Shown here in pieces: positions 1,888 through 33,543 of a stretch of DNA of 64,000 bases; within the stretch, counting starts at the first letter, position 1; the number at the start of each line of letters is the position of its first letter. The notes under the pieces were generated by a model. It ran no database searches, had not been told where the DNA came from, and was given only the letters and a program-made list of their open reading frames with translations. The stretch spans positions 186,001 to 250,000 of the IMG/VR virus record IMGVR_UViG_3300024239_000011; one strand, given 5' to 3'. Position numbers and translations under genes: made by a program.

Positions 1888-2352
1888 ATGGAGGAAATAA
1901 AGGGAATACTGGAAAATCCACTTACTGTCGGATATTTTTCCGCCATTTTGAGTTTAATTATTGGGTTGATTGTCAAAGATATCGCAATCAATTTTGTTTC
2001 CGGGCTTATGTTTTTCCTCGATAAAAATTTCACCGAAGGTGATACCGTTTACATTGACGGTCATAAGGCTGTTATTAGTAAAATTGGTATCAAAATGACG
2101 GTATTTACAATGAATAATGGTCGCGGGTTGACGTGGCGTTTTGTTCCCAATTCAAAAATCCGTGATCTTGAATTGGAAAAGGTCGTTATTCCCAAAGAAA
2201 CACAACTTATCCCAGAAATGCAGCGTAAAATAACAGATATGGAAGATTTCCTTGAACGGGCGCATGCAGAATTCCGAAAGGAAGTCGCAGAGCGTGAACG
2301 CAAAATAGAAGAAAAAGCCAGGGAAGCTCTTGAAAAAGGAGGGTCAGTTTAA
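1888..2352 (+). CDS. Small MscS-like (mechanosensitive channel domain) membrane protein
   Basis: TM helix, then NFVSGL...F..GD.V.IDG..A.I..IG, typical of the MscS beta domain; CTAAATA promoter at 1861. Confidence 0.6.
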   Translation: MEEIKGILENPLTVGYFSAILSLIIGLIVKDIAINFVSGLMFFLDKNFTEGDTVYIDGHKAVISKIGIKMTVFTMNNGRGLTWRFVPNSKIRDLELEKVVIPKETQLIPEMQRKITDMEDFLERAHAEFRKEVAERERKIEEKAREALEKGGSV

Positions 2353-3440
2353 TGTCTAGACTGTCACTATGGCGCAAACAAAAAGGTAACGATTATAATT
2401 TTATTGATCGTACATCCGCAGAACAATTCACCGTAGGCGGGGTAAGTGTCTATATCCACAAATATATAGGACCGTATACCGAGGAAGGTATAAACGAAGA
2501 AGAAGCGTTCTTAGCACCAAAAAATATAAATCAAGCCAAAGCCCCAGAGACATGGATACAGGATTTGCTTTTCATGGAGAACCGTGACCGCAAATACGAC
2601 CCACACATCTATGAACTTCGTGGACATTTCACGGTACAAGACAACGATTTCGATCTTTCACAATTTGGTCTAATGCTATCGAACGACAATATCTACATCA
2701 CGTTCCATCTAAACACAATGATCGATCAGATCGGACGAAAATTAATGTCAGGTGATGTGGTTGAACTACCAAATATGCGCGAAGATGCTATGTTAGATGA
2801 TACCGCAGATGCCATCAACAAATTCTATGTAATTGACGATGCAAACTATGCCGCCGAAGGATATAGCCCATTATGGTATCGCCATTTATGGCGTTGTACA
2901 TGTAAACCTCTTAAGGATAGCCCCGAATTTCGCGACATCCTTGGTACCGGTGAGAAGAAAGACGATCTCAAGAACCTGTTATCCACTTATGCGAAAGACA
3001 TTGCATTAAGCGATTTGTTGATAGAAGCTGCTGAAGCAGAATCACCAATGCGGAATTTTGAAACTGCCCATTTCTATGTCATCCCAGGTGATGACAGTAT
3101 TGGACGTATTCAGCAACCATCAATATGGTCGGGAGATGGCAAGCCGCCAAATGGCGCCGAACCAGTTGGGAGCGGTAAAATGTTTCCGTCCAATGCCCAT
3201 ATGGGTGATTATTTCCTGCGTACTGATTACGAACCGCACGTTCTGTACAAAAAGGAAAAGAATGGTTGGTCACCGATTGAGGTGGACTATCGCCGCACGT
3301 GGTATGCAGCCCACCGCATACTTGAATCATTTGTTGGCTCTACCGATAGCCCTGACCAAACATGGGTTGATGACAAAGGCAAAACTGTTACAGAACGACA
3401 GAATCTCAAAAAAGCGATCAAACCACGCAGTGACGTATGA
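2352..3440 (+). CDS. Neck protein (T4 gp14-like)
   Basis: MSRLSLW..KGNDY.FIDR, IQDLLFMENRDRKYD, DFDLSQFGL motifs; lies between gp13 and gp15 homologues. Confidence 0.75.
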   Translation: MSRLSLWRKQKGNDYNFIDRTSAEQFTVGGVSVYIHKYIGPYTEEGINEEEAFLAPKNINQAKAPETWIQDLLFMENRDRKYDPHIYELRGHFTVQDNDFDLSQFGLMLSNDNIYITFHLNTMIDQIGRKLMSGDVVELPNMREDAMLDDTADAINKFYVIDDANYAAEGYSPLWYRHLWRCTCKPLKDSPEFRDILGTGEKKDDLKNLLSTYAKDIALSDLLIEAAEAESPMRNFETAHFYVIPGDDSIGRIQQPSIWSGDGKPPNGAEPVGSGKMFPSNAHMGDYFLRTDYEPHVLYKKEKNGWSPIEVDYRRTWYAAHRILESFVGSTDSPDQTWVDDKGKTVTERQNLKKAIKPRSDV

Positions 3441-4329
3441 TGTCATCTACCTCGGTATAATTCTTGTCTTTCACATACACCCAGGTGTAACCAGCAGCCT
3501 CGACTAACTGTCGTTTAATGGCGGTTGTGCCTGGGTTATTTTTCTCCTGAAGTTTCTCTACATACCACGACTTGATCTCCACCACGTACTTTCCAAACAA
3601 GATAAAGTCAGCGATATAGAACACCCCAGCATCGGTAAACACAGGACCGTTCCCAATGTGATCATGGGTCAAACCGTGAATATCAAAACAGCGGGTGAGG
3701 AAATCAAGCTCATAACTGGATTGGTACAGCAGATCGGTGTCTCGAAATGGTTTTTGCTTAAAAACATTACGGTCTTTATCACTCAAAGTCTTTATCATAC
3801 TTTCAATCATTTTCTGCTTCGATTCTGGATTGAAAATAGGATTAAATTTTGAAGAGTGCATACGGTCAGATCGCCGTTTCTGATCATCCGACCCCTCATA
3901 CCGGGTATCGAAATAATCGCGAACCCGTTCGTTAAGATCAGTCGTCGCATGCTGTTTTTTCGCCTTTTCACTTAGGCGCTGACGTTCTGCATCAAACCGA
4001 TCAGAATTGCGAAAACGCCACCACCCTTCGCGTTGTTTATCCATAAAATTAGGATCATTTGCGCGCACTTGAAGGAATTCTTGACGTTTCCGTTCTTTAT
4101 CATCTTCTGTCCACATTTTCTTATATGCAGAACGCATTTCGTGAGAGATCAATGGCGCATCGGGAAACCGAGAAAGGTATTCGTCCCGTGTCGTTCCAAT
4201 CGATTTGAAATACTTGTTAGTCAGCCGCTTATACTGATTTCCAGTAAACAAACAGGTAATTACCGCTGGTGTATGATCTGGGTAAGTAATATCCACCGTT
4301 TTTGGGTCGGGACCGCCATAAATAGACAT
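3418..4329 (-). CDS. Free-standing homing-type endonuclease (C-terminal PD-(D/E)XK domain)
   Basis: YQSSYE...YIADF...VVEIKS nuclease motif with basic N-terminal DNA-binding region; antisense insertion between gp14 and gp15; ATG 4329 follows a GAGGTG RBS. Confidence 0.7.
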   Translation of the reverse strand: MSIYGGPDPKTVDITYPDHTPAVITCLFTGNQYKRLTNKYFKSIGTTRDEYLSRFPDAPLISHEMRSAYKKMWTEDDKERKRQEFLQVRANDPNFMDKQREGWWRFRNSDRFDAERQRLSEKAKKQHATTDLNERVRDYFDTRYEGSDDQKRRSDRMHSSKFNPIFNPESKQKMIESMIKTLSDKDRNVFKQKPFRDTDLLYQSSYELDFLTRCFDIHGLTHDHIGNGPVFTDAGVFYIADFILFGKYVVEIKSWYVEKLQEKNNPGTTAIKRQLVEAAGYTWVYVKDKNYTEVDDIIRHCVV

Positions 4330-4427
4330 ATAACACCTCACAGATTTCCGCTGTGAGTATTTATCTTTTGCTATTACGGGCAAATATGTGGTTTGGGTCC
4401 GGTGACCAAAATATGGAGGAAAATCAA

Positions 4428-5798
4428 GTGGCTAACCTTAATTTTTGGTATTCTGGGCAAATTAGGTCGTATATGCTTCAGTTCCTTCGCGTCTTCGCGG
4501 GGTTCCAGATCAAGACGGGGAAGGGCAAAGATGGCACCGAGACATTCATCAAGGTTCCAATTCGCTACTCGGATATGAGCCGTCAAGTTGGACATATTCT
4601 GCGTGAAAACAGCGAAAACATGATGTTATCGTGCCCGTTCATGACTGCGCATTTAACTGAAATTAGCCCTTCGGCGGAACGGCGCCAAACACCGAACCAT
4701 GTTAGTACGGTTCAAGTCACCGAACGCTATCATGACGATGGGTCAAACCAATATACCAACAAAATCGGTCAGGCATACTCAGTGGAACGTTTTATGCCGG
4801 TCCCCTACGATTTGGGCATGGAATTGAACATCTGGACATCGAACACTGACCAGAAACTTCAATTGCTTGAACAACTACTGGTTCTGTTCAACCCGTCCCT
4901 CGACCTTCAGACTTCGAACAACCCTGTGGATTGGTCCGCGTTGACCCTGATCGAGTTGGAATCAATCTCATGGTCGAGCCGCAGCATTCCGCAAGGTGCG
5001 TCGGAAGAAATCGACATAGCCACTTTGTCGTTCAAAATGCCGATATGGCTGAACCCACCGGCCAAGGTCAAGCGTCAGAAGATTATCCAACAGATCGTTA
5101 TGAACCTGATGGAGCATCCCACCATGCTAGACGCAGAACCGGGGGATATCCCGAACTGGACTGCGGACACCAAGCTCGATGCTCGGGTAGTGATCTCGCC
5201 AAATCAGTATCGCATTCGTCTCGAAGGCGATATCGTCACGCTTCTCGACTTCGCCGGAAACGAAAAGGGAGACGATGGTAAGGTATTCGAATGGTCCCCG
5301 CTTCTCGATCAGTATGGACAATACGAAGAAAGTGTATCGCAGATCGTTATTCGTACTTCGACCGACTACGATAACTTCGAGAACAATATCATTGGAACGA
5401 TCAAACTGATCCCGAACCAACCGAACAAGCTTCGGTGGACGGTCGATCCCGAAACGGTGCCGCGTGAAACCATCAAGAACATTCACGCGATCATCGACCC
5501 CCATAAGAACTACCCAGGAAAAGGTTTGCCCGCTCCATCGGTCGGTCAACGGTATCTGCTGCTTGATGAAATCGGACCCTGCGAAGCGTGGGGGAATATC
5601 GCCGCAAGTGCCAACGACATTATCGAATTCACCGGGGCACGCTGGGAGGTATATTTCAACTCAAACCAAATTCGAGAAACCCATATAGTCAAAAACTCAA
5701 ACCCAAACAGTCTAAAACACTACAAATGGAATGGACAGGAATGGGATGAATTAATCAACGGAGAATATTTCCCCGGCTCATGGCGCATCTTTCTGTAA
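4428..5798 (+). CDS. Tail completion/sheath stabiliser (T4 gp15-like) with C-terminal extension
   Basis: FWYSGQIRSY.LQF, VPIRY, MPVPYDL...IWTSNTDQKLQLLEQ.LVLFNPS; GTG start after GGAGG. Confidence 0.8.
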   Translation: MANLNFWYSGQIRSYMLQFLRVFAGFQIKTGKGKDGTETFIKVPIRYSDMSRQVGHILRENSENMMLSCPFMTAHLTEISPSAERRQTPNHVSTVQVTERYHDDGSNQYTNKIGQAYSVERFMPVPYDLGMELNIWTSNTDQKLQLLEQLLVLFNPSLDLQTSNNPVDWSALTLIELESISWSSRSIPQGASEEIDIATLSFKMPIWLNPPAKVKRQKIIQQIVMNLMEHPTMLDAEPGDIPNWTADTKLDARVVISPNQYRIRLEGDIVTLLDFAGNEKGDDGKVFEWSPLLDQYGQYEESVSQIVIRTSTDYDNFENNIIGTIKLIPNQPNKLRWTVDPETVPRETIKNIHAIIDPHKNYPGKGLPAPSVGQRYLLLDEIGPCEAWGNIAASANDIIEFTGARWEVYFNSNQIRETHIVKNSNPNSLKHYKWNGQEWDELINGEYFPGSWRIFL

Positions 5799-5803
5799 CT
5801 AAA

Positions 5804-5965
5804 CGGAACTATCGCATCAGATCAGGTAAACACCATTTGAGCGATATTCCTGTTTCAACGACACGTAGCTGATCAAGCCGTGAGCGACTTGATCCCGGCA
5901 GAGGTATCTCCACAGGCGGTGACGCCGCTAGGCGTCGGTTCGGGCATTCCTTGCCCTACCAAATA
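5804..5965 (-). ncRNA. Putative TnpB omega/reRNA scaffold
   Basis: Minus strand has GGGCAAGGAATGCCC hairpin and CGCCTGTGGAGA...TGAAACAGGAA complementarity, typical of tnpB 3' ends; boundaries approximate. Confidence 0.55.
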
Positions 5966-7048
5966 TTCAAATCCCCAACGCTTGATGTTCAAAGACGCAT
6001 TCGCGTCTCTGTCCATGACCAAACCGCAATTGGGGCAGTTGTAGGTTCGCTGGTTCAGCGGCATTTTCTGCCGATGATCACAGCAAGAACAGACCTGACT
6101 ACTGGGATCAAAGCGGTCAATTTGGACGAAATGCTTTCCCTGCCAGACCGCCTTGTAGGTGAACTGGCGTAGAATTTCGCCCCAACTGGCGTCGGCTATC
6201 GCCTTCGCCAAATTGTGGTTTCGCATCAATCCTTTGATGTTCAGGTTTTCGGCACAAATCACGCTGTAGGTCTTGGTTATCGAACTGGTGAATTTGTGGA
6301 TCAGGTCGGCTCTCTGATTTCGCACCTTGCGGTGTTGGCGGTAGAGCCGTAATTGGCATTTCTTTCGGTTCTGGCTGTCCTTACGAGCTTTGCTCAGACG
6401 GCGTTGCAAGCGGCGTAGCCGCTTCTGTGCCTTCCGCAGATGACGGGGATTGGCGACCACCTCGCCGTCACTGGTCACGACCAGTTCCTTCAGACCGAGG
6501 TCAATACCCACTGTGCTGTCCAAATCGGGAGCGATTGGCTGGTCGGGTATGTCAATCTCACAGACCACACTAATGTACCAATTATTGCCGTCTTGGCTCA
6601 CCGTGGCGGATAACGGACGCCCCTCGGGCAGCCGTCCAGCACGGAACCGCATCGATTCCATCTTTGGTAAATGGACGACATGATCACCAATGGCGAAGGA
6701 TTGGTTGGTCAAATAGAACGAATCACGTAAATTCGATTTCTTCTTGAACCGAGGGAAGCCCTTGCCGCCCTTGAAACATGCCTTCAAGGCACCATCAAGG
6801 TTTCTGGCGACCCGTTGAAGTGAACAAGCTGGTGCCGCCCCGAGCCAATCCGTCTCATTCTTCATCAACGGCAACATCTTTGCCATGTCTGCGTAAAAGA
6901 AGAATTTTTTCTCAGCCGCGTAGCGGTCTTGGTTCAGGTGGAGCAGATGGTTCCACAGCCAACGGCAATTGCCACCAAATTGCTTGAGTTGTTCGGTCTG
7001 GTTGCGAGTTGGATAAAGTCGTAGTTTGAATGCTTTCTGTGTTTTCAT
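5873..7048 (-). CDS. tnpB: RNA-guided endonuclease TnpB (IS200/IS605 OrfB family)
   Basis: KAFKLRLYPT N-terminus, GFPRFKKK, RuvC-I GIDLG, RuvC-II AENL, Zn finger CSCC..CPNCG, RuvC-III DRDANAS; catalytic D/E/D intact. Confidence 0.95.
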   Translation of the reverse strand: MKTQKAFKLRLYPTRNQTEQLKQFGGNCRWLWNHLLHLNQDRYAAEKKFFFYADMAKMLPLMKNETDWLGAAPACSLQRVARNLDGALKACFKGGKGFPRFKKKSNLRDSFYLTNQSFAIGDHVVHLPKMESMRFRAGRLPEGRPLSATVSQDGNNWYISVVCEIDIPDQPIAPDLDSTVGIDLGLKELVVTSDGEVVANPRHLRKAQKRLRRLQRRLSKARKDSQNRKKCQLRLYRQHRKVRNQRADLIHKFTSSITKTYSVICAENLNIKGLMRNHNLAKAIADASWGEILRQFTYKAVWQGKHFVQIDRFDPSSQVCSCCDHRQKMPLNQRTYNCPNCGLVMDRDANASLNIKRWGFEYLVGQGMPEPTPSGVTACGDTSAGIKSLTA

Positions 7049-7217
7049 CTGCTAAATACCAATGCGGGACAGCCCCATACATCTGCTGGGGTTTCATCGG
7101 GAGGTCGAAGGTCCGATGATTACCGCTACTTCTATTTAGCAAAAACGCTCAGTGGCAGTCGGTCAATCTATTGGGTCTACCTGATCTGATGCGATAGTCC
7201 CGTAACTAAATACGGTC

Positions 7218-7761: not shown

Positions 7762-8979
7762 ATGACCTACATCACCAGTGACGAATTCCACGCCATCATT
7801 ACCCCTGCGACGGTTCGTATCAGCAAGCTGTTTGAGCAAGCTGGGTTCGACATCCGTATCGTCGGTGGAGCCGTGCGTGATTCGCTGCTCCGAGTGATGC
7901 CAAAGGATGTGGACTTCGCGACCAACGCGACCCCCGAAGAAATGATTCGGTTGATGGTTGCCGCTGATCTGTACGTGATCGGCGTCACGGAGTCCCTGCG
8001 GCGTGGTAAGACTCTGAATGAAATCATCGCGCGTATCGATGATATTCCGGGTATCCAGCATGGCACCGTGAGTGCGGTCATCAATGGTGAAACCTTCGAA
8101 ATCACCACGCTGCGATATGACATGGAAACGACCGGTCGGCATGCTAAAGTGGCATTTCATCGGTCGTTCCCGGAAGATGCCAAGCGTCGTGATTTCCGGT
8201 TCAATGCCATGTACGCCAGCATGGACGGGGAACTGCACGACTACGTTGGCGGTAAAGACGATCTCGACCAACAAGTTGTCCGGTTCGTTGGCGCCCCATC
8301 GCAGCGCATTAGAGAAGACTACCTGCGCATCTTGCGGTACTTCCGTTTTGCGGCGCGATTGGGGTTCTCCTTCGATGACGCGGCTGACGCGGCAATCGCA
8401 TACAACGTTGCGGGTCTGACGACCATCAGCGGCGAGCGCATCTGGGCGGAAATGTCCAAACTGTTCATGTATCGTGACCCGGTGAAATACCTGTTGCACA
8501 TGCATGCTCTGGGTGTAACCGAGGCAATCCAGTTGCCGGTGGATATGGATCAGGTGCGGGTGGTGTCCGAGTTCGCTACGTCGCCCGTGTCGGTACTGGC
8601 GGCATCGCTGCGTTCGGTTAGCGAGGTCGATACCCTGGCTGCCAGATGGAAGCTGAGCGGCGTTGAACGCAACTTGGCAGCATTCTTGGTGCAATATCGT
8701 GACGACCGGGTTGGGTTGCGGACTGCCCAGGATATGGTGGTCGATGGTGCCAACCACGACTTCGTTGCTGAACTACTGCGGGTCGGTGGACGTGTTGCCG
8801 AAGCGGATACGTTGGTTGGTTGGGTAACCCCCAAGTTCCCGGTTTCCGGCGCCGATCTGATGGCTTTGGGTATGAAACAAGGCAAAGAACTGGGTGATGC
8901 CTTGAAAAGCATGAAAGAACGCTGGAAACGCAGCGACTTTCAACTGTCCAAGGACGAACTGATGGCTGGCGGGGTTTAA
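7762..8979 (+). CDS. cca: Class II tRNA nucleotidyltransferase (CCA-adding enzyme)
   Basis: VGGAVRD.L....KDVDFAT, EITTLR, DAKRRDF..NA, RIREDYLRILRYFRF, ISGERIW; sigma70-like promoter TTGACA..TATATT at 7711-7738. Confidence 0.9.
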   Translation: MTYITSDEFHAIITPATVRISKLFEQAGFDIRIVGGAVRDSLLRVMPKDVDFATNATPEEMIRLMVAADLYVIGVTESLRRGKTLNEIIARIDDIPGIQHGTVSAVINGETFEITTLRYDMETTGRHAKVAFHRSFPEDAKRRDFRFNAMYASMDGELHDYVGGKDDLDQQVVRFVGAPSQRIREDYLRILRYFRFAARLGFSFDDAADAAIAYNVAGLTTISGERIWAEMSKLFMYRDPVKYLLHMHALGVTEAIQLPVDMDQVRVVSEFATSPVSVLAASLRSVSEVDTLAARWKLSGVERNLAAFLVQYRDDRVGLRTAQDMVVDGANHDFVAELLRVGGRVAEADTLVGWVTPKFPVSGADLMALGMKQGKELGDALKSMKERWKRSDFQLSKDELMAGGV

Positions 8980-18016: not shown

Positions 18017-19822
18017 TCAATGATGACGCCATACCCACCGCAATTTACCACAATCCCATATTCGATCAAAACCAAGTGTCTGCGCAGCAAGACTTTCAGT
18101 CATTTCAGAAGGATTGATACCAAACTTCTCCAATCTTTCCTTACGCAAGATGGATTTATGATACCTACGTTTATAATCCGTATAGTAAAAACTTGGGTCA
18201 ACATTACCATCCAGCATAAATCCAAGACGCTGGTATAGTTTCCCGGTACTGTGGCGATTATCAGAAAAAGAAACTACCGTAGTCGGGCAACATATTTCCA
18301 CAAATGTTTTGAACATTTTCGAAGCAATACCAGGGTAATGAAATCCGTTGGTTGCATATCTCACTAGTTCGTAGTCATATTCACCACGTGGATTGGTTGA
18401 GAACGCCATAACCGCTACGAGAGCATCATCATCGAAGGCACCAAAAATAGTGCCTACGGCAATACCACTCCCTTGTAAATGATGCTTATCTAAAAACTTA
18501 GCAGCAGACGCCCATTCTATCTTGGATATCTCTAATTGTCTTGCCCCGACACCCCGTGGGGCATGTCCAATTAAATGATGTATGCGGCTACGAACTACGT
18601 CATTATTTAGAACCCACTCATCACCGAATATCGTCAGGAGCGAAATTCCTTTTTCATTACATTGGCGCCATTTATCATAGTGATAAAAAGCGTTAGGGCG
18701 CCCCCGCTCGGACCATTGGCTATGAAAATACAACCCGCACATTTCAATCGCCAATGCCAAGTCAGGTAGATAAAAGTCTAGCTCACCCTTAATAATGGTT
18801 TGAGTATTCTTCTTGTAATTTATTCCAGCGTTATCAAGAATACGCTGCATAGCCGTTTCATATCCAGACCGCCCCGGTCGTTCGATCTCATACCGATCCA
18901 TATAGCGTCCAATGGTTCTGTCATTGACCTCCAACTTGACGGCAAGCTCGGATATCGAATACACCTCACAAAGTTGTTCGAACGCTTCTTTGTTTTGAAG
19001 GATATCGTATGCAACTGTAGACATTTGTCCCTGTACCCAATTCGAACGCCCATACCTGTTCAAATAGGTTTGGATACGCTTTGCTTTTACCACATCAGAT
19101 TTTAGAGGATGATCTACCCCTATAGTCGCAACCAAGATATCACGTATCTGCTGCTGAATGACAGGATTGGAAAAAGGGTTATCATATCCTGTTTGTTCGG
19201 TATACGCGGCACGAGCAATGTGCATGGCACTATCAGAACTATACCGATCTTGGCATGTTTGCTTGATTTTCTCTTTCACTTCATCCAATTGGGTATGCCA
19301 TTCCACCCCATATCGTATCAAATTGTTTAGCTTAGTGTTTTCCTTAACCTCTGCTGCCTGGGTATGCCACTCCACCCCATATTTTGCCAGATTTTGCTTT
19401 CGCAATCGGCATTTCACGTCATCTACCATCATGGCGTTTTCTACCCCATAACGCTCGATACAAGTAGAACGCATTTTATCTACAACAGCAGCTTTTTGTT
19501 GATCACTCTGCAAACTATGAAAATTAGATAGTTTATTGGATTGGTTCTCGCGGTTGCAAGAACATTCAACTTTGCTGCCGCAAAACCGAAACCCTTTATC
19601 AAGTGTATTGAATTTTTTACGGTTACCGTTCTTGCAGAATGGCGTCTCATCATGGAGTACAAGATAAACCATTTCGGGTATTGTCAAATCAATACCCCAT
19701 TTTTTGGTTTCTTGATACAACCATGCAAGCAATATCTTGTTTTGATTTATAGAACGCGCATAACCACGTTTTTGACTTAGATTTTTTACGACATCACGCA
19801 TAGTCGAATCCGAATCTCTCAA
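18017..19822 (-). CDS. Hef-like free-standing homing endonuclease (YGVE repeats, Vsr/PD-(D/E)XK nuclease, GNAT-like C-terminal domain)
   Basis: Repeated (K/R)YGVE..Q..VKE units; ELDFYLP..LAIE..G.YFHS...H..K...C...GI.L.TIF.DEW; FL..HHLQG...YELVRY...SFSD.R...G.LY..LGF; AT-rich; start may be ATG 19801. Confidence 0.75.
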   Translation of the reverse strand: MRDSDSTMRDVVKNLSQKRGYARSINQNKILLAWLYQETKKWGIDLTIPEMVYLVLHDETPFCKNGNRKKFNTLDKGFRFCGSKVECSCNRENQSNKLSNFHSLQSDQQKAAVVDKMRSTCIERYGVENAMMVDDVKCRLRKQNLAKYGVEWHTQAAEVKENTKLNNLIRYGVEWHTQLDEVKEKIKQTCQDRYSSDSAMHIARAAYTEQTGYDNPFSNPVIQQQIRDILVATIGVDHPLKSDVVKAKRIQTYLNRYGRSNWVQGQMSTVAYDILQNKEAFEQLCEVYSISELAVKLEVNDRTIGRYMDRYEIERPGRSGYETAMQRILDNAGINYKKNTQTIIKGELDFYLPDLALAIEMCGLYFHSQWSERGRPNAFYHYDKWRQCNEKGISLLTIFGDEWVLNNDVVRSRIHHLIGHAPRGVGARQLEISKIEWASAAKFLDKHHLQGSGIAVGTIFGAFDDDALVAVMAFSTNPRGEYDYELVRYATNGFHYPGIASKMFKTFVEICCPTTVVSFSDNRHSTGKLYQRLGFMLDGNVDPSFYYTDYKRRYHKSILRKERLEKFGINPSEMTESLAAQTLGFDRIWDCGKLRWVWRHH

Positions 19823-19918: not shown

Positions 19919-19935
19919 TAGATTTGAATAAACAA

Positions 19936-19970
19936 GAAACGGCGCCCGAAGGCGCCGTTTCCCTTTTGTT
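19936..19970. terminator. Bidirectional terminator downstream of MCP
   Basis: GAAACGGCGCC-CGAA-GGCGCCGTTTC stem (cUUCGg loop on minus), T-rich tails on both strands. Confidence 0.85.
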
Positions 19971-19993
19971 CTCGTACTCCAGTAGGAATAAAA

Positions 19994-21193
19994 TCACAAA
20001 AATTTGAGATTCGATGTGTTGATACCAACCAACCCAAGGTAGTCCGCGGCATTGCCCAATGAAGAGGCAGTGTTCGTAAGTTCAATGTAGCCATAACGGG
20101 TCATGAACGACACCACCGGCTCGAAGGTGCGCGGATCGATGATCACGCCCGAAGAAGTCAGCGGCACGTATGGGCAGTAGTACGCAGCAGCGTCGATCTC
20201 GCCCGGACCCTTATAACCGACCAGCACCGGGGTGTTGTCGGAAGCATACTGGTCCACGTACACGCGCATGGAGTTGTTCAGGGTACCGACGAACTTGGTG
20301 TTGGTCGGAGCCTCGAACACACCTTCGGTGGTACGAGCGAAAGCGGAGGTGGTTGCGGACTGAAGAATGGTCAGCGCAGTCGGGGAAACCACAACCCAGT
20401 TACCAGCACCACGACGGGTACGGGCAGCGATGAGGTTTGCCTGACGGTTGATCAGAACGGCCAGAGCGGCATGTTCGTCACCAACGAAGGTGGCGGTACC
20501 AGAGACGTTGCCCTGGTCGTACATGGCGGTCGGGGTGCCCGGCAGAGCGCGAAGGCTCTGAAGGATTTCCTGATCGATTTCAGCAGTGATTTCCTGAGCC
20601 AGAGCGGCCATGATTTCAGCTTCGATGTCGATGCCCTGCTGAGCCTGTGCGTCCTGCGCGGCTTCGAAGGTCCAGCGAGCGGACAGACGACGGGTCTTAG
20701 CTTCGACGGTTTCCTTCAGGATTTGGATGTTCAGGCGAGGACCGGGAACACCTTCCATCGTGGCAGTCGGAGCAGCCTTCGGGTTATTCGGGTCTTGGTT
20801 ACCCGAGTAGAAACGAGCAATGTCGAACGGGGACAGAGCTTCGGTACCAGCAGTCACGCCGCCGCCAACCGCAGGGATCGTGTCGGCATAACGCACACGC
20901 AGGGTGTGAATCTGAGCGACCGGACCAGTCATTGGCTGCACACCAATGATTTCATTGGCAATGACGGTGGGCATAACGCGCCGAATAACCGGCAGAATAA
21001 CCTTGTTCAAAGTTGCGATGTTGCCAGTAGCGGTAGCACCGACAGTGGCGTTTTCCAAGATCGGGGTCTTGGACATCAGGTCTTTGCGAGTGTTCTCAAG
21101 AACAACTTCCATGACCTTCTTCTTATTACCGGTCAGACCCTCGCAGAGAGCATCGCGGGTCTGCTTCCAGTGTGATTCAAAAAGCTTCGACAT
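19994..21193 (-). CDS. Major capsid protein (T4 gp23-like)
   Basis: ILPVIRRVMP..IA.EIIGVQPMTGP, VEAKTRRLSARWT.EAAQD, EITAEID.EI, YCPYVPL, FMTRYG. Confidence 0.97.
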   Translation of the reverse strand: MSKLFESHWKQTRDALCEGLTGNKKKVMEVVLENTRKDLMSKTPILENATVGATATGNIATLNKVILPVIRRVMPTVIANEIIGVQPMTGPVAQIHTLRVRYADTIPAVGGGVTAGTEALSPFDIARFYSGNQDPNNPKAAPTATMEGVPGPRLNIQILKETVEAKTRRLSARWTFEAAQDAQAQQGIDIEAEIMAALAQEITAEIDQEILQSLRALPGTPTAMYDQGNVSGTATFVGDEHAALAVLINRQANLIAARTRRGAGNWVVVSPTALTILQSATTSAFARTTEGVFEAPTNTKFVGTLNNSMRVYVDQYASDNTPVLVGYKGPGEIDAAAYYCPYVPLTSSGVIIDPRTFEPVVSFMTRYGYIELTNTASSLGNAADYLGLVGINTSNLKFL

Positions 21194-21209
21194 GTTCCCT
21201 ATCTCCTTA

Positions 21210-22625
21210 TTAAATACCTGCCATCTTAATACCAGCGAGCATCTTGAACTGATCGAGTTCGGCATCAAATGTTGCCGTATCGGTCTTTTCGTTCAGCGAA
21301 GCTTCGGTAAGACGGTTGTTTCGGTTTCCAGTGACCGCAACAGGTTTGCGCTGCGGAATGCTGTTGTTTTCGACAAGTTTCTTGCGACCATCCTTACGCG
21401 GACCAGCGGTCTCACCCAGTACAGACGGCAAGTATTTGTGGAACGCATCCTTCAGATTATCAGTACGAACATCTGCAAGGAGTTCTTCCATAATGACGCG
21501 CTTATCACGCGCCAGCGGCTTCAGGCATTCATTGAGTACCTTGGTACGCAATGCATTGTCTTCTGCCTTCTTGATGCGAGACTTAGCTTCCGTAAGAACC
21601 ATTTGCTGCTTCTTGACGGCACTAATAGCCTCTGCAAGTTTCTGTTCCACCCCAGCCTTCTCGTGCTGAAGCTTCTTAATTTCGGTACCTTCTGCAAGGT
21701 ACGACGCCATGTATTCAGCGGCGAAAGCCTCGAAAATACGACGACCGAAATTGTTCTCGCGAGCAGCCTTCAAGTCGTCACGGAACTGGGACATTTCTGC
21801 CTTCAGGGTGGACTCGATAGTTTGTTCAACGAGGGTGGCCGCACGCTTGATGAACGCGCTACGGGACTCTTCCAGCTTCTTCTTACCTTCAGCAACCAAT
21901 TTGACACGGGATTCCACGAGTTGCTTTTTGTCCTCGTTGAATTCCTTCATTTCATTGGTCAACTGCTTCAATACGAAGCTTTCTAGTGCCTTGGTACGTT
22001 CTTTAAGCTGCTTGTTGTAGCCAATCTTGGCTTCGCGAAGCTGCTTCTCCATCTTGACGCGCTGTTCTTGCAGAAGACGACGATCCTGAGTGAATTCATC
22101 CATTTCTTCTTTAAGCTGCTTCAGGACAAAGCCCTGTAGCACAGCGGTATGCTCAGACACTTTCTTCTTGTAGAGTGCCTTGGCTTCGGCAACAGCCTTA
22201 GCCAACTTGACACGCTGAGCATCGACAGCCTTGCGGTCATCGGTAAACTCAGCCATTTCCTCAGAAAGCTGCTTCAAGACGAAGGAGTTGAGCAGATCAA
22301 CCTTTTCCTTCAACTTGCTGCGGTAATGTGTCTTTGCTTCTTTGACAGCCTTGTCCAACTTCTCGCGTTGGCGGGAAACCGCCTTGCGATCCATCTGGAA
22401 CTCTTCCAGTTCAGACTTGATGGAGTCAGTAAGCATACGGTCCATGGCTTCAACGAGAAGACCACGGTCGTGGTCATAGCGACGGGCAAACTCTTCGCGA
22501 ACTTCGGTTTCCACCTCTTCGCGAAGGCTCTTCCGCGCCTCGTTCACTTTTTGTTCAATAGCTTCCTGAATTACCTTTTTATTTTCTTCAGAAAGCATTT
22601 TGAACATTTCGTTCTCTTTATCCAT
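21210..22625 (-). CDS. Prohead scaffolding protein (gp22-like)
   Basis: Long coiled coil with FVLKQL..EM.EF..D repeats, between protease and MCP. Confidence 0.85.
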   Translation of the reverse strand: MDKENEMFKMLSEENKKVIQEAIEQKVNEARKSLREEVETEVREEFARRYDHDRGLLVEAMDRMLTDSIKSELEEFQMDRKAVSRQREKLDKAVKEAKTHYRSKLKEKVDLLNSFVLKQLSEEMAEFTDDRKAVDAQRVKLAKAVAEAKALYKKKVSEHTAVLQGFVLKQLKEEMDEFTQDRRLLQEQRVKMEKQLREAKIGYNKQLKERTKALESFVLKQLTNEMKEFNEDKKQLVESRVKLVAEGKKKLEESRSAFIKRAATLVEQTIESTLKAEMSQFRDDLKAARENNFGRRIFEAFAAEYMASYLAEGTEIKKLQHEKAGVEQKLAEAISAVKKQQMVLTEAKSRIKKAEDNALRTKVLNECLKPLARDKRVIMEELLADVRTDNLKDAFHKYLPSVLGETAGPRKDGRKKLVENNSIPQRKPVAVTGNRNNRLTEASLNEKTDTATFDAELDQFKMLAGIKMAGI

Positions 22626-30082: not shown

Positions 30083-30937
30083 ATGAATAAATTCGCAGCT
30101 AAAACAAAAGCAATACCATACTCCGATACAGAGATAGAACGTCTTCGGGTGTTATGGGTTTCGGGTTCTATGGAAGAAATAAAAGAAGCATTTCCTAACC
30201 GCTCTTTGATTGGACTTGGACAGAAAGCTAAAAGTCTGGGTTTGGAATGTAAAGTTGAACGCGCCAGACGTGGTGATCTGTCCGTATTATTGGATAAATC
30301 ACTAACATCATTTTACTGGCTCGGTTTTATACTTGCCGATGGACATTTCACCAAAACAGGGCAATTAGTCGTTGCATTAATGGAAAAAGATAAAAATCAC
30401 CTTGAACATCTTGCTCAATACCTAAAAACAACAGTCAAATATCCATATAGGCGAGAAAAAGAATACAAAAAGAGGACATCATTAATTTCACCATCAGAAC
30501 AACAATTAAGATCAGTTGTTCGAATAACAGTACAAGACAAAGAAATAGTAGATCAGATCAATTTTTTATTAGGATTGCCATCTTCGAGAAAGACATACAA
30601 CCCTCCTACTAAGTTAGACGACTTGAATACAGACGAAATTACGGCTCTGTTTATAGGTTTCTTTGATGGGGATGGGTCATCAAGTTATAGTTCAATAGAG
30701 GGGTGTGTTCGGAAATCAGCAAGACTTGAAAATCATATTTCGTGGAAACCAGTTTTTGAAATCTTTAGAAATAACAATTTAATACACAACGCTATAACAC
30801 ACAAAAATAAGAATACCGTTTCCGGACATCCTACGAAAACTACTATGATGCGGTTATTAGCGTTCGCCACTGAGTATAAGTTACCAATTCTAATTCGGAA
30901 ATGGTCAATCTGGTTTGACGAAAGCAACTTAAACTGA
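30083..30937 (+). CDS. LAGLIDADG homing endonuclease
   Basis: YWLGFILADG and LFIGFFDGDG motifs; AT-rich island between GC-rich nadE and pncB. Confidence 0.9.
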   Translation: MNKFAAKTKAIPYSDTEIERLRVLWVSGSMEEIKEAFPNRSLIGLGQKAKSLGLECKVERARRGDLSVLLDKSLTSFYWLGFILADGHFTKTGQLVVALMEKDKNHLEHLAQYLKTTVKYPYRREKEYKKRTSLISPSEQQLRSVVRITVQDKEIVDQINFLLGLPSSRKTYNPPTKLDDLNTDEITALFIGFFDGDGSSSYSSIEGCVRKSARLENHISWKPVFEIFRNNNLIHNAITHKNKNTVSGHPTKTTMMRLLAFATEYKLPILIRKWSIWFDESNLN

Positions 30938-32528: not shown

Positions 32529-33473
32529 CTAAACAATAATACCCCTCTCTACTAAAATTTGGTAGAATTTGTGCTTGTGGGGATACAATATTCTTATTAA
32601 TTCTATACCATTATTAGCACAATACTTTGTTTTCACATCATCGCGGTATTGCGTATCACGTAAAGATTTTTCCCCTCCCCAATGACCGACAGGGCGGAAA
32701 TGTTGTGCTCCATCATACTCAATAACGGTATGAATACTTGGTAAATAAAAATCAAATCGTAACGGATATCCCGTTGATGGGTTTCGACAATCATCAAATG
32801 TTTTTTGAAAAACATACGCAATATTATTATCATCCAATATTCTCATAAGGCGAATTTCCGCCACAGAACTACTTTTACATTTAGGGCACCCATTCCCGTT
32901 TAAATGATGTCGTGGCGTTTGTTCAAAAATACCGTGATGCGGGCAGTCTATTTGCACCCTTGTATAATCATTTACGTATGACACATAGGAATAGTTGTAA
33001 AACTGCCCATGTATCACGTTGGCTCTTTTACCAAATATTTCAGCCGTTAAAGATTGTTTCTGCGCAGTTTTACGATCACCACATCGGGGACAACCATATC
33101 CATGTGAATGATTATCGGGTGATTGTTCGAAAACACCATGTAACGGGCATTTTATTTTTACTTTTGTGCGTGCATTCTTATACTCCACAAGGTCATATTG
33201 ATAAAACCCTTCATGAATGCTCGTAGATTTGTTGATAAACTCAATTGATTTCTTTTCTATATTTTTCCCTTTATTGCGCACACTACTAGCACAGCGAGGA
33301 CAACCTTGACCTTGTAGATGATTATCAGGTCTTTGAGTAAATTCGCCGTGTACCCGACATGTAATTACCACCGGGGTCTTATTGTTGATGTAGTTAGACT
33401 TATCATAGCTATATTTGCCGTCATGAACAGATAGTGCCAACCCAACAAACCATTCAGTATCCCGTTTTTGCAT
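32529..33473 (-). CDS. Free-standing homing-type endonuclease (Zn-finger repeats plus Vsr-like nuclease)
   Basis: Three H...Y.Y....Y....V.I.C..HG.F.Q.P..H..G.GCP.C repeats; LRFDFYLP...IEYDG.QH. Confidence 0.8.
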   Translation of the reverse strand: MQKRDTEWFVGLALSVHDGKYSYDKSNYINNKTPVVITCRVHGEFTQRPDNHLQGQGCPRCASSVRNKGKNIEKKSIEFINKSTSIHEGFYQYDLVEYKNARTKVKIKCPLHGVFEQSPDNHSHGYGCPRCGDRKTAQKQSLTAEIFGKRANVIHGQFYNYSYVSYVNDYTRVQIDCPHHGIFEQTPRHHLNGNGCPKCKSSSVAEIRLMRILDDNNIAYVFQKTFDDCRNPSTGYPLRFDFYLPSIHTVIEYDGAQHFRPVGHWGGEKSLRDTQYRDDVKTKYCANNGIELIRILYPHKHKFYQILVERGIIV

Positions 33474-33543
33474 AGTTGCCTCACAAACCATCATGTGCTA
33501 TTATTTAGCAAAATTAGCACATGACAGTTCAAAAGGTCGCCAC

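What the first reader, a model, noticed from the sequence alone, without database searches (positions are those of the whole stretch)
4330..4465. Second endonuclease also has a copy of its neighbour's conserved sequence beside its promoter
Seen: TTTTGCTATTACGGGCAAAT (4366-4385) matches gp15 5' coding sequence TTTTGGTATTCTGGGCAAAT (4443-4462; F-W-Y-S-G-Q-I) at 17/20. It abuts the endonuclease's late promoter (TAAATA on minus, 4358-4363). A CTCACAG/CTGTGAG hairpin (4337-4357) overlaps the RBS. This parallels the MCP case with a different nuclease, suggesting a general target-mimic design. Adjacency to the promoter fits an autorepression operator.
Basis: partly seen in the sequence, partly recalled or inferred. 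Interest (0 to 1): 0.6.

Follow-up and report, generated by a model that had tools for sequence, protein, structure and literature searches.

The report
Nuclease gene carries copy of target
A selfish nuclease gene wedged in front of a tail gene of a huge phage keeps a short look-alike of that tail gene's first codons right beside its own promoter; this most likely lets the nuclease switch itself off, as phage T4's I-TevI is known to do.

Summary
4366-4385 and 4443-4462 match at 17/20 (about 1 in 2000 shuffles), and the motif occurs nowhere else in the 543-kb phage genome.

The minus-strand ORF 3418-4329 is a predicted PD-(D/E)xK nuclease of an unnamed family. It is absent from the nearest relative, where the two flanking structural genes are adjacent, and from 80 of 80 gp15 loci in IMG/VR. 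Every full-length homologue whose surroundings I read lies divergently next to gp15. It therefore looks like a gp15-specific free-standing homing endonuclease.

GATAAATAC (4357-4365, minus) matches this phage's late-promoter motif; TAAATA is 15-fold enriched upstream of gene starts. The hairpin covers the Shine-Dalgarno sequence, and a late transcript should lack its 5' arm.

In about a dozen diverged cassettes of the same family, a gp15-5'-like element starts right after the nuclease's TAAATA box, on the other side of the box and in the other orientation than here. Target-like DNA beside the promoter is therefore recurrent. This fits I-TevI-type autorepression, a known kind.

Nothing shows binding. 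The homing site is inferred, not mapped. The claimed MCP parallel was not reproduced. Confidence in the operator reading is about 0.5.

The parts
2352..3440 (+). Upstream virion structural gene, in the position of T4 gene 14. Its last 23 nt overlap the 3' end of the nuclease ORF.
   Evidence: phrog_11591, E 2e-97. In relatives L012 and L018 it lies directly before gp15.
3418..4329 (-). Predicted free-standing homing endonuclease, 303 aa (P0001). It has a weakly ROS/MucR-like N-terminus, a helical middle part and a C-terminal PD-(D/E)xK nuclease domain with E207, D241, E251 and K253 invariant.
   Evidence: No Pfam family. 15 homologues at 33-43% identity with invariant catalytic residues. Model pLDDT 83; C-terminal domain matches TnsA at Z 8.3, I-Bth0305I at Z 8.1 and Vsr at Z 7.2. 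ROS_MUCR E 0.008.
4317..4325 (+). CATAAATAG, a late-promoter-like box on the gp15 strand. It lies antisense inside codons 2-4 of the nuclease and is a candidate promoter for gp15.
   Evidence: It is the only plus-strand TAAATA between 1862 and gp15. The motif is defined. Its distance to the gp15 start, about 103 nt, is unusual for this phage. Inference.
4336..4339 (-). Shine-Dalgarno GAGG of the nuclease gene, 6 nt before ATG 4329.
   Evidence: Read from the sequence. The start agrees with the family alignment and with the public gene call of 303 aa.
4337..4357 (.). 7-bp hairpin (CTCACAG, 7-nt loop, CTGTGAG). On nuclease-sense RNA it sequesters the SD.
   Evidence: -11 kcal/mol with the 5' arm present; -2.7 kcal/mol with the SD free if the RNA starts at 4352. 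Also listed by the terminator scan on both strands.
4357..4365 (-). Late promoter of the nuclease gene, GATAAATAC.
   Evidence: ATAAATA, TAAATAC and CTAAATA are the most intergenic-enriched 7-mers of the genome. Consensus is G[A/C]TAAATA[C], mostly 20-40 nt before starts. TAAATA is 14.8-fold enriched at -55 to -12. Here it lies 28 nt before the ATG.
4366..4385 (+). Copy 1: non-coding look-alike of the gp15 5' codons, directly upstream of the nuclease promoter box. Proposed operator.
   Evidence: 17/20 to copy 2, p about 5e-4. It is also the best match in the intergenic region to a matrix built from 72 nuclease-free gp15 5' ends of other phages, p 0.003-0.006.
4415..4419 (+). Shine-Dalgarno GGAGG of gp15.
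   Evidence: Read from the sequence. It lies 8 nt before GTG 4428.
4428..5798 (+). gp15 homologue (tail sheath stabiliser / tail completion protein).
   Evidence: PF16724, E 5e-32. phrog_11196, E 6e-112. Relatives in Atu_ph07, Phosso and PA5oct.
4443..4462 (+). Copy 2: native gp15 codons 6-12 (F-W-Y-S-G-Q-I). Inferred to be part of the nuclease's recognition site.
   Evidence: Homologous to the most conserved nucleotide stretch at the insertion junction in nuclease-free phages. That it is the target is an inference.

Best explanation
The ORF at 3418-4329 is a free-standing homing endonuclease of an uncharacterised PD-(D/E)xK family whose members home to the junction in front of gp15.

Its recognition sequence probably includes the conserved first codons of gp15 (inferred). 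Copy 1 (4366-4385) is a target-like binding site placed against the nuclease's own late promoter. Once nuclease protein accumulates, its DNA-binding part occupies this site and hinders RNA polymerase at GATAAATAC, so the enzyme limits its own synthesis (inferred, by analogy with I-TevI).

A second layer acts on translation. The hairpin 4337-4357 hides the SD on any transcript that enters from upstream. A transcript started at the late promoter begins at about 4351-4352, lacks the 5' arm and is translatable. The spacing is shown here; the start site is inferred from T4.

gp15, whose own promoter was displaced by the insertion, is probably served in one of two ways. Either the CATAAATAG box embedded antisense in the nuclease's first codons drives it, or read-through from the promoter at 1862 does (inferred).
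For: 1. Nuclease. The catalytic residues are invariant across the family and the fold is PD-(D/E)xK. The architecture is modular with a MucR-like N-terminus. A paralogue in the same genome has ROS_MUCR, NUMOD3 and a Vsr/DUF559-like domain.

2. Mobile-element behaviour.
- L012 (gp15 61% identical) has the two structural genes adjacent, with a 54-nt spacer.
- L018 against L007 shows a 990-nt cassette inserted exactly between a stop codon and the gp15 ATG.
- 0 of 80 IMG/VR gp15 loci carry the gene.
- All 14 distinct full-length homologues whose context was read (33-43% identical to P0001) are divergent neighbours of gp15.
- Other endonuclease types use the same neighbourhood: GIY-YIG in L069 and HNH in L007.

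3. The promoter motif is established for this genome.

4. Copy 1 is unlikely to be chance.

5. Recurrence. A matrix built only from nuclease-free gp15 5' ends finds its best hit starting 1 nt after the nuclease TAAATA box.
- Hits: L004, L007, L098, L100, L101, L105, L107, L111, L112 and L113. L017 has it shifted by 3 nt.
- Scores are 7.7-22.8 (L017 1.9). Only about 8 false positions score 8 or more in 1.07 Mb of control DNA.
- These nucleases are only 44-65% identical to each other, so a neutral leader would have decayed.
- The window has the look-alike on the opposite side and in the opposite orientation. That argues for a second, independent acquisition of 'target beside promoter'.

6. Precedent. 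I-TevI binds an operator that is 15/20 identical to its homing site and overlaps its late promoter. RBS hairpins bypassed by late promoters occur in I-TevI, I-TevII, I-TevIII, segB and mobE. Neighbours' promoters embedded in endonuclease ORFs are also known (PMC2988022).
Against: - There is no biochemical evidence of binding, cleavage or repression.
- The homing site is not mapped. That it includes the F-W-Y-S-G-Q-I codons is inferred from the insertion position and from conservation.
- Copy 1 abuts the promoter box but does not overlap it.
- The layout differs from that of the relatives, so one could argue these are two unrelated phenomena.
- L014 and L104 have no such element, and L015 has at most half of one.
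- The relatives' leader element may be conserved for another reason. It contains their SD.
- Only identical or near-identical strains of this phage are available, so conservation of copy 1 itself cannot be judged.
Confidence: 0.5

Rival explanations
1. Recombination scar. Copy 1 is a functionless leftover of gp15 5' sequence, either brought in with the cassette from a donor phage or templated locally during repair of a break at the target.
For: - Copy 1 reads like a gp15 N-terminus (F-C-Y-Y-G-Q-I).
- In its 3' half it is closer to the canonical allele of the clade that carries most cassettes than to the window's own allele (14/15 against 12/15).
- It lies at the outer edge of the cassette, where a junction is expected.
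- There is no start codon and the frame differs from gp15.
Against: - The patch has sharp borders with unrelated flanks on both sides. This requires two junctions, or a roughly 45-nt deletion that removed the donor's promoter, RBS and ATG while leaving the patch flush against the TAAATA box.
- The same kind of look-alike is conserved next to the box in cassettes whose proteins are only 44-65% identical. That indicates selection rather than decay.
Confidence: 0.22
2. The element serves gp15 rather than the nuclease. Copy 1 would be part of the gp15 mRNA leader, for example a small stem-loop or a piece of a terminator/attenuator formed with the 4337-4357 hairpin and the T-rich run. Alternatively it is an RNA-level site shared with the gp15 coding start.
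For: - Copy 1 folds into a 6-bp stem-loop on plus-strand RNA.
- The hairpin plus the T-rich run is listed as terminator-like on the plus strand.
- Copy 1 would be transcribed in a gp15 leader that starts at the embedded box.
- In the relatives the element lies in the nuclease mRNA leader and includes its SD.
Against: - The fold of the leader region is no better than shuffles (z 0.28 and -0.85).
- Terminator-like sites are no more frequent than in shuffles (7 found against 6.0 expected).
- No Rfam family matches.
- An RNA-level role cannot unite the two layouts. Here the copy lies outside the late nuclease transcript; in the relatives it lies inside it.
Confidence: 0.12
3. Chance resemblance in a short spacer, picked out after the fact.
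For:
- 17/20 is the lowest score class among the 43 local repeats of the genome.
- The match to the independent matrix is modest (score 4.4, p 0.006).
Against: - p is about 5e-4 for this spacer, and about 1 such pair is expected per whole genome.
- The copy lies exactly against the promoter box.
- An analogous element occurs in relatives.
Confidence: 0.08

Closest known systems
[quoted passage not shown]
   Same: A sequence resembling the enzyme's homing site (15/20 in T4, 17/20 here) sits at the endonuclease's own late TAAATA-type promoter. The enzyme is modular, with separate DNA-binding and catalytic parts. A second, translational layer acts through an RBS hairpin (PMC2988022).
   Different: The nuclease here is a predicted PD-(D/E)xK enzyme, not GIY-YIG. 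It is free-standing and divergently transcribed, not intron-encoded. The look-alike abuts the promoter box and does not overlap it. In relatives it lies in the transcribed leader. Binding, repression and the homing site are untested here.
RBS-sequestering hairpins bypassed by late promoters (T4 I-TevI, I-TevII, I-TevIII, segB; Aeh1 mobE; T4 genes e, soc, 25, 26, 39)
   Same: The hairpin covers the SD. The late promoter box lies immediately before the 5' arm, so late transcripts should lack that arm.
   Different: The transcription start is not mapped in this phage. The relatives of this nuclease do not share the hairpin.
T4 seg and mob free-standing homing endonucleases
   Same: The gene is inserted between conserved genes and distributed sporadically among relatives. 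A neighbour's promoter may be embedded in the endonuclease ORF, as for gene 32 within segG.
   Different: The catalytic fold and DNA-binding modules are different. The host phage is a 543-kb jumbo phage of the Atu_ph07/PA5oct kinship. The orientation is opposite to the flanking genes, as with segD.
PD-(D/E)xK homing endonuclease I-Ssp6803I and the Vsr-like EDxHD family (I-Bth0305I)
   Same: Restriction-endonuclease-like core. The I-Bth0305I catalytic domain is the second-best structural match (Z 8.1). I-Bth0305I is also phage-borne, with a separate N-terminal DNA-binding region (PMC3384342).
   Different: No sequence match to any solved chain. The conserved residues are E...D...E-x-K with a lysine, not the E-D-x-H-D histidine pattern. 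I-Ssp6803I is a small tetrameric bacterial enzyme without extra DNA-binding modules.

Membership tests
PD-(D/E)xK nuclease superfamily | Restriction-endonuclease-like alpha/beta core | tested here: met
   Residues 189-303 of the model (pLDDT mostly above 85) align to TnsA (Z 8.3), I-Bth0305I (Z 8.1), NGO0050, Vsr and VRR-NUC. Nearly all top rows are nucleases of this fold. Z about 8 is borderline by the tool's own note.
PD-(D/E)xK nuclease superfamily | Acidic residues plus lysine in the order E ... (P)D ... (D/E)-x-K | tested here: met
   E207, D241, E251 and K253 are invariant in all 16 family members.
Free-standing homing endonuclease gene | Optional gene inserted between conserved genes whose order is otherwise kept | tested here: met
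   L012 and L018 lack it with the flanking genes adjacent. 0 of 80 IMG/VR gp15 loci have it. All 14 distinct full-length homologues whose context was read sit at the same junction.
Free-standing homing endonuclease gene | Site-specific cleavage of the endonuclease-free allele near the insertion point, and gene conversion in mixed infection | not testable with these tools
   This needs the purified enzyme and a cassette-free substrate, or phage crosses. The host is unknown.
Free-standing homing endonuclease gene | Endonuclease-carrying alleles diverged at the target site | tested here: inconclusive
   The gp15 5' site of nuclease-carrying loci is less consensus-like than that of nuclease-free loci after allowing for the next 48 nt (Mann-Whitney p 1.3e-4). 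The test is not corrected for phylogeny, and L004 and L017 keep a consensus-like site.
I-TevI-type autorepression by a homing-site-like operator | Sequence similar to the homing site at the endonuclease's own promoter | tested here: inconclusive
   Similarity to the gp15 5' end is significant and the copy abuts the promoter box. Relatives have the same kind of element after the box. The homing site itself is only inferred.
I-TevI-type autorepression by a homing-site-like operator | The enzyme binds the operator about as well as the homing site, cleaves it poorly, and represses the promoter | not testable with these tools
Late-promoter bypass of an RBS hairpin | Stable stem that includes the SD, with the late promoter placed so that late RNA lacks the 5' arm | tested here: met
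   -11 kcal/mol against -2.7 kcal/mol. The box ends at 4358 and the 5' arm is 4357-4351. The start about 6-7 nt after the box is taken from T4 knowledge, not measured.
EDxHD (I-Bth0305I, Vsr-like) homing endonucleases | Conserved E-D-x-H-D active-site pattern with a histidine as general base | tested here: not met
   The family alignment shows E-x-K with an invariant lysine and no conserved H-D. The definition is from PMC3384342.
ROS/MucR DNA-binding domain (PF05443) | Score above Pfam's gathering threshold | tested here: not met
   P0001 residues 20-66 score 16.7 bits against a cut-off of 25.4 (E 0.008). The genomic paralogue passes with 28.7 bits. It is a lead for the DNA-binding part, not a membership.

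The most novel reading that the evidence does not exclude
Keeping a look-alike of the homing site against one's own promoter may be a general, repeatedly evolved self-limiting device of homing endonucleases. Here it would have arisen at least twice within one uncharacterised phage PD-(D/E)xK family: after the promoter box in most cassettes, and before it and inverted in this phage. If so, the look-alikes reveal the recognition sequence of an unstudied nuclease family (roughly the gp15 codons for F-Y-D-G-Q-I-R) without any experiment. They would also give a sequence-only way to predict the targets of orphan homing endonucleases.
Probability: 0.4. Interest if true: 0.65.

Novelty: new variant of a known kind. 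Interest (0 to 1): 0.55.

Why it matters
Autorepression through a homing-site look-alike has been shown for a single enzyme, I-TevI, and proposed for two others, all intron-encoded in T4. Finding the same logic in a different catalytic family, free-standing and in huge environmental phages, would suggest it is a general solution to how a selfish nuclease keeps itself harmless to its carrier. Here it appears in two different layouts.

It also gives a concrete, testable prediction of the DNA target for a nuclease family that has no Pfam model and no characterised member. It further marks the junction in front of gp15 as a hot spot used by at least two kinds of endonuclease, with a third (HNH) in flanking positions.

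Tried and rejected
- Nucleotide and protein searches of the phage collection with the region and with the nuclease found nothing.
- A single-protein scan of IMG/VR with the nuclease found nothing.
- The PDB sequence search gave only noise. Foldseek on the whole model gave no row at E 0.001 or better, though nearly all weak rows were PD-(D/E)xK nucleases. The wide structural search was needed.
- A direct test of each relative's spacer against its own gp15 5' end was negative: best 11-15/20, p above 0.02. The element appeared only when the spacers were scanned with a matrix of nuclease-free alleles, in both orientations.
- CAAATA inside copy 1 as a variant gp15 promoter was rejected. One-mismatch variants of TAAATA are enriched only 1.5-2.7-fold, against 14.8-fold for TAAATA.
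- The motif as a general regulatory site was rejected. There is no further copy in the genome.
- The MCP parallel was not reproduced. The spacer before the DUF7487 protein (18017-19822, downstream of the Gp23 gene 19994-21268) was compared with the MCP gene. The best match was 14-15/20, p 0.29-0.86. I did not have the coordinates of that other finding.
- A profile comparison of the family with that DUF7487 protein was not significant.
- Rfam found nothing relevant.
- Public runs gave one near-identical strain with 3 SNPs, none in 4330-4465, and no run on record as RNA, so there is no transcript evidence.
- No complex prediction was run, because the question is protein-DNA.

Full report
**Setting.** The window is bases 186001-250000 of a 543-kb virus record from a subsurface or soil metagenome. 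Its gp15 homologue is nearest to those of jumbo phages Atu_ph07, Phosso and PA5oct, at 38-42% identity. Around the finding lie four genes:
- a virion structural gene (2352-3440, plus; phrog_11591);
- a 303-aa ORF on the minus strand (3418-4329, P0001);
- the gp15 homologue (plus; PF16724, E 5e-32);
- a TnpB-like gene (5873-7048, minus).

**The observation.** The 30 bases on either side of each copy are unrelated.
- Shuffling the 98-nt spacer and comparing it with the first 120 nt of gp15 reached 17/20 once in 2000 trials.
- Genome-wide, 43 pairs of this quality lie within 150 nt of each other, against 0-3 in Markov shuffles. Most of them are tRNA-like sequences, coding repeats or a repeat array.
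- No third copy exists in the genome.
- gp15 starts at GTG 4428, not further upstream. GGAGG lies 8 nt before it, the N-terminus M-A-N-L-N matches M-A-S-L-N of relative L012, and the public gene call has 456 residues.

**The neighbour is a nuclease and behaves as a mobile gene.** P0001 has no Pfam family, but it has 15 metagenomic homologues at 33-43% identity. In these, E207, D241, E251 and K253 are invariant.
- Structure: a model built on that alignment (pLDDT 83) has a C-terminal domain that aligns to TnsA (Z 8.3), the catalytic domain of the homing endonuclease I-Bth0305I (Z 8.1), Vsr (Z 7.2) and many other restriction-endonuclease-fold nucleases.
- DNA-binding part: the N-terminus is weakly ROS/MucR-like. 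A paralogue elsewhere in the genome combines ROS_MUCR (above threshold), NUMOD3 and a Vsr/DUF559-like domain. This is the modular build typical of phage homing endonucleases.
- Absence in relatives: L012 (gp15 61% identical) has the same gene order, but the structural gene and gp15 are adjacent with a 54-nt spacer. In another clade, L018 (gp15 81% identical to that of L007) has the stop codon of the structural gene abutting the gp15 ATG. L007 has a 990-nt cassette exactly there.
- Frequency and position: none of 80 IMG/VR gp15 loci carries the gene. All 14 distinct full-length homologues whose surroundings I could read lie divergently next to gp15.
- Other endonucleases use the same neighbourhood: a GIY-YIG gene directly before gp15 in L069, and HNH genes in flanking positions in L007 (downstream of gp15 and upstream of the structural gene).

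**Promoter and hairpin.** The most intergenic-enriched 7-mers of this genome are ATAAATA, TAAATAC and CTAAATA.
- The aligned sites give G[A/C]TAAATA[C], mostly 20-40 nt before start codons.
- TAAATA is 14.8-fold enriched at -55 to -12 of gene starts, while its one-mismatch variants are not.
- The nuclease gene has GATAAATAC 28 nt before its ATG.
- The hairpin folds at -11 kcal/mol and includes three of the four SD bases. An RNA that begins at 4352 folds at only -2.7 kcal/mol and leaves the SD free.
- In T4, late transcripts start 6-7 nt after the box (my knowledge of T4; not measured here). Late RNA would then lack the 5' arm.
- This is the arrangement described for I-TevI, I-TevII, I-TevIII, segB and mobE (PMC2988022).
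- gp15 has no TAAATA in its spacer. The only plus-strand box nearby is CATAAATAG at 4317-4325, antisense in nuclease codons 2-4. This recalls host promoters embedded in T4 seg and mob genes, but its function here is an inference.

**What copy 1 resembles.** In 72 distinct nuclease-free junctions the first codons of gp15 are the best-conserved nucleotides. A matrix of that stretch, which contains no nuclease-carrying locus, was scanned over the spacers of the nuclease-carrying loci.
- In the window the best hit is copy 1, p 0.003-0.006.
- Its 3' half (TAT TAC GGG CAA ATA) is nearer to the canonical TAT GAC GGN CAA ATA than to the window's own gp15. Its 5' half follows the window's own allele.
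- In L004, L007, L098, L100 and L101, and in L105, L107, L111, L112 and L113 from the metagenome scan, the best hit starts one base after the nuclease's TAAATA box. There it reads on the nuclease strand and runs into the SD.
- L017 has it shifted by three bases. L106 has it weakly. L015 has at most half of it. L014 and L104 have none, and L104 has a sigma-70-like promoter instead.
- Scores of 7.7-22.8 compare with about eight false positions at 8 or more in 1.07 Mb of control DNA from the nuclease-free loci.
- The nucleases of these cassettes are only 44-65% identical to one another. The surrounding spacer is not conserved. The element is therefore under selection.

**Interpretation.** Target-like DNA set against the endonuclease's own late promoter recurs in this family. 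In the window it occurs in a second layout: the other side of the box and the other orientation. A double-stranded DNA site fits both layouts. A role in the nuclease mRNA fits only the relatives.
- The closest known mechanism is I-TevI autorepression. There an operator 15/20 identical to the homing site overlaps the late promoter, and the enzyme binds it as well as its target but hardly cleaves it.
- I therefore rate the operator reading as the best explanation, at about 0.5.
- The main rival is a functionless recombination scar. It accounts for the gene-like reading of copy 1. It does not account for the sharp borders, the exact placement, or the conservation of the analogous element in relatives.
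- Chance is unlikely, but it cannot be excluded for the window alone.

**Weak points.**
- The homing site is inferred from the insertion position and from conservation, not mapped.
- The gp15 5' site of nuclease-carrying loci is less consensus-like than that of nuclease-free loci (p 1.3e-4). The test ignores phylogeny, and two carriers keep a consensus-like site.
- Only identical or near-identical strains of this phage were found, and none has a difference in 4330-4465.
- No run on record as RNA holds the region.

**Novelty.** The regulatory logic is known from T4. What is new is the enzyme family (a phage-borne, free-standing, modular PD-(D/E)xK nuclease tied to gp15), the host phage type, and the two alternative placements of the look-alike.

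Noticed in passing
window 5803-7203: A TnpB-like gene (5873-7048, minus; OrfB_IS605, Cas12f1-like TNB and HTH domains) is flanked by a 29-nt imperfect inverted repeat (5803-5832 and 7175-7203, 27/29). In relative L012 gp15 is followed directly by the CCA-adding/poly(A) polymerase-like gene, which here lies at 7762-8979. The element therefore looks like a second insertion next to gp15. Two public contigs of the same phage end exactly at 5832.
   Followed up: partly
genome 303369-304290 (outside the window; window coordinate about 117400): An array of about 13 copies of a roughly 37-nt partly palindromic repeat (core CGCACCACG ... CCGTGGTA) spaced 67-72 nt apart. It looks like a CRISPR array. 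No check for cas genes or spacer matches was made.
   Followed up: partly
window 18017-19822 (minus): A 601-aa protein with DUF7487 (E 2e-22) lies just downstream of the major capsid gene (19994-21268, Gp23) and behind a strong terminator hairpin (19926-19971). A weak profile alignment shows a possible PD...E-x-C nuclease-like motif. No TAAATA box precedes it, and no significant copy of MCP sequence lies in its upstream spacer.
   Followed up: partly
genome 382375-383490 (L002:1375-2490): A paralogue shares the N-terminal half of P0001 (25% identity, E 1e-14). It has ROS_MUCR, NUMOD3 and a Vsr/DUF559/MTES_1575-like nuclease domain, so it is another likely homing endonuclease of the same phage. 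Its neighbours were not examined.
   Followed up: no
window 30083-30937 (plus) and 32529-33494 (minus): An ORF with a LAGLIDADG_3 match (E 1e-6), and an ORF with DUF723, a treble-clef zinc finger and a CapR homology domain. These are further candidate mobile nucleases or regulators in the window.
   Followed up: no
L007:3711-4502 and L007:8053-8817; L069:2971-3492: In relatives, gp15 and the preceding structural gene are flanked by other endonuclease genes: HNH with an I-TevI-type DNA-binding domain, HNH with NUMOD3, and GIY-YIG directly before gp15. The junction is a hot spot for several endonuclease families.
   Followed up: partly
L115-L151 (metagenome loci): About 36 further loci encode proteins that match only the C-terminal nuclease domain of P0001 (residues about 185-300, 26-43% identity). 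This suggests the domain is combined with other N-terminal parts, perhaps at other target genes. Their contexts were not read.
   Followed up: no
L104 (upstream of the nuclease start at about 1158): One cassette has no TAAATA box and no target-like leader. Instead it has a near-consensus sigma-70 promoter (TTGACA, 17 nt, TATACT) before the nuclease gene. This is a different solution for expressing the same gene.
   Followed up: no
window 4337-4369 (plus strand): On the plus strand the same hairpin is followed by a T-rich run (TATTTATCTTTT), so it is listed as terminator-like. If it functions, it would stop or attenuate plus-strand transcripts just before gp15. Terminator-like sites are no more frequent than in shuffles in this region.
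   Followed up: partly
window 1888-2352 (plus): A 154-aa protein with a mechanosensitive-channel beta-domain match (PF00924, E 3e-8) sits inside the neck/tail structural module. It is conserved at the same place in L012.
   Followed up: no
L014 (gp15 start region): The gp15 homologue of this nuclease-carrying contig has a run of 14 T at its 5' end, and its called start lies 53 nt downstream. This is either an assembly slip or a real frameshift at the very site discussed here.
   Followed up: no
window 3941-4090 and 4370-4519: Two 151-nt pieces identical to the window occur in a wastewater run labelled as RNA-Seq. Other wastewater and sludge runs hold small shares. The phage or a very close relative is therefore not confined to the subsurface samples. 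The run may in fact be DNA.
   Followed up: partly
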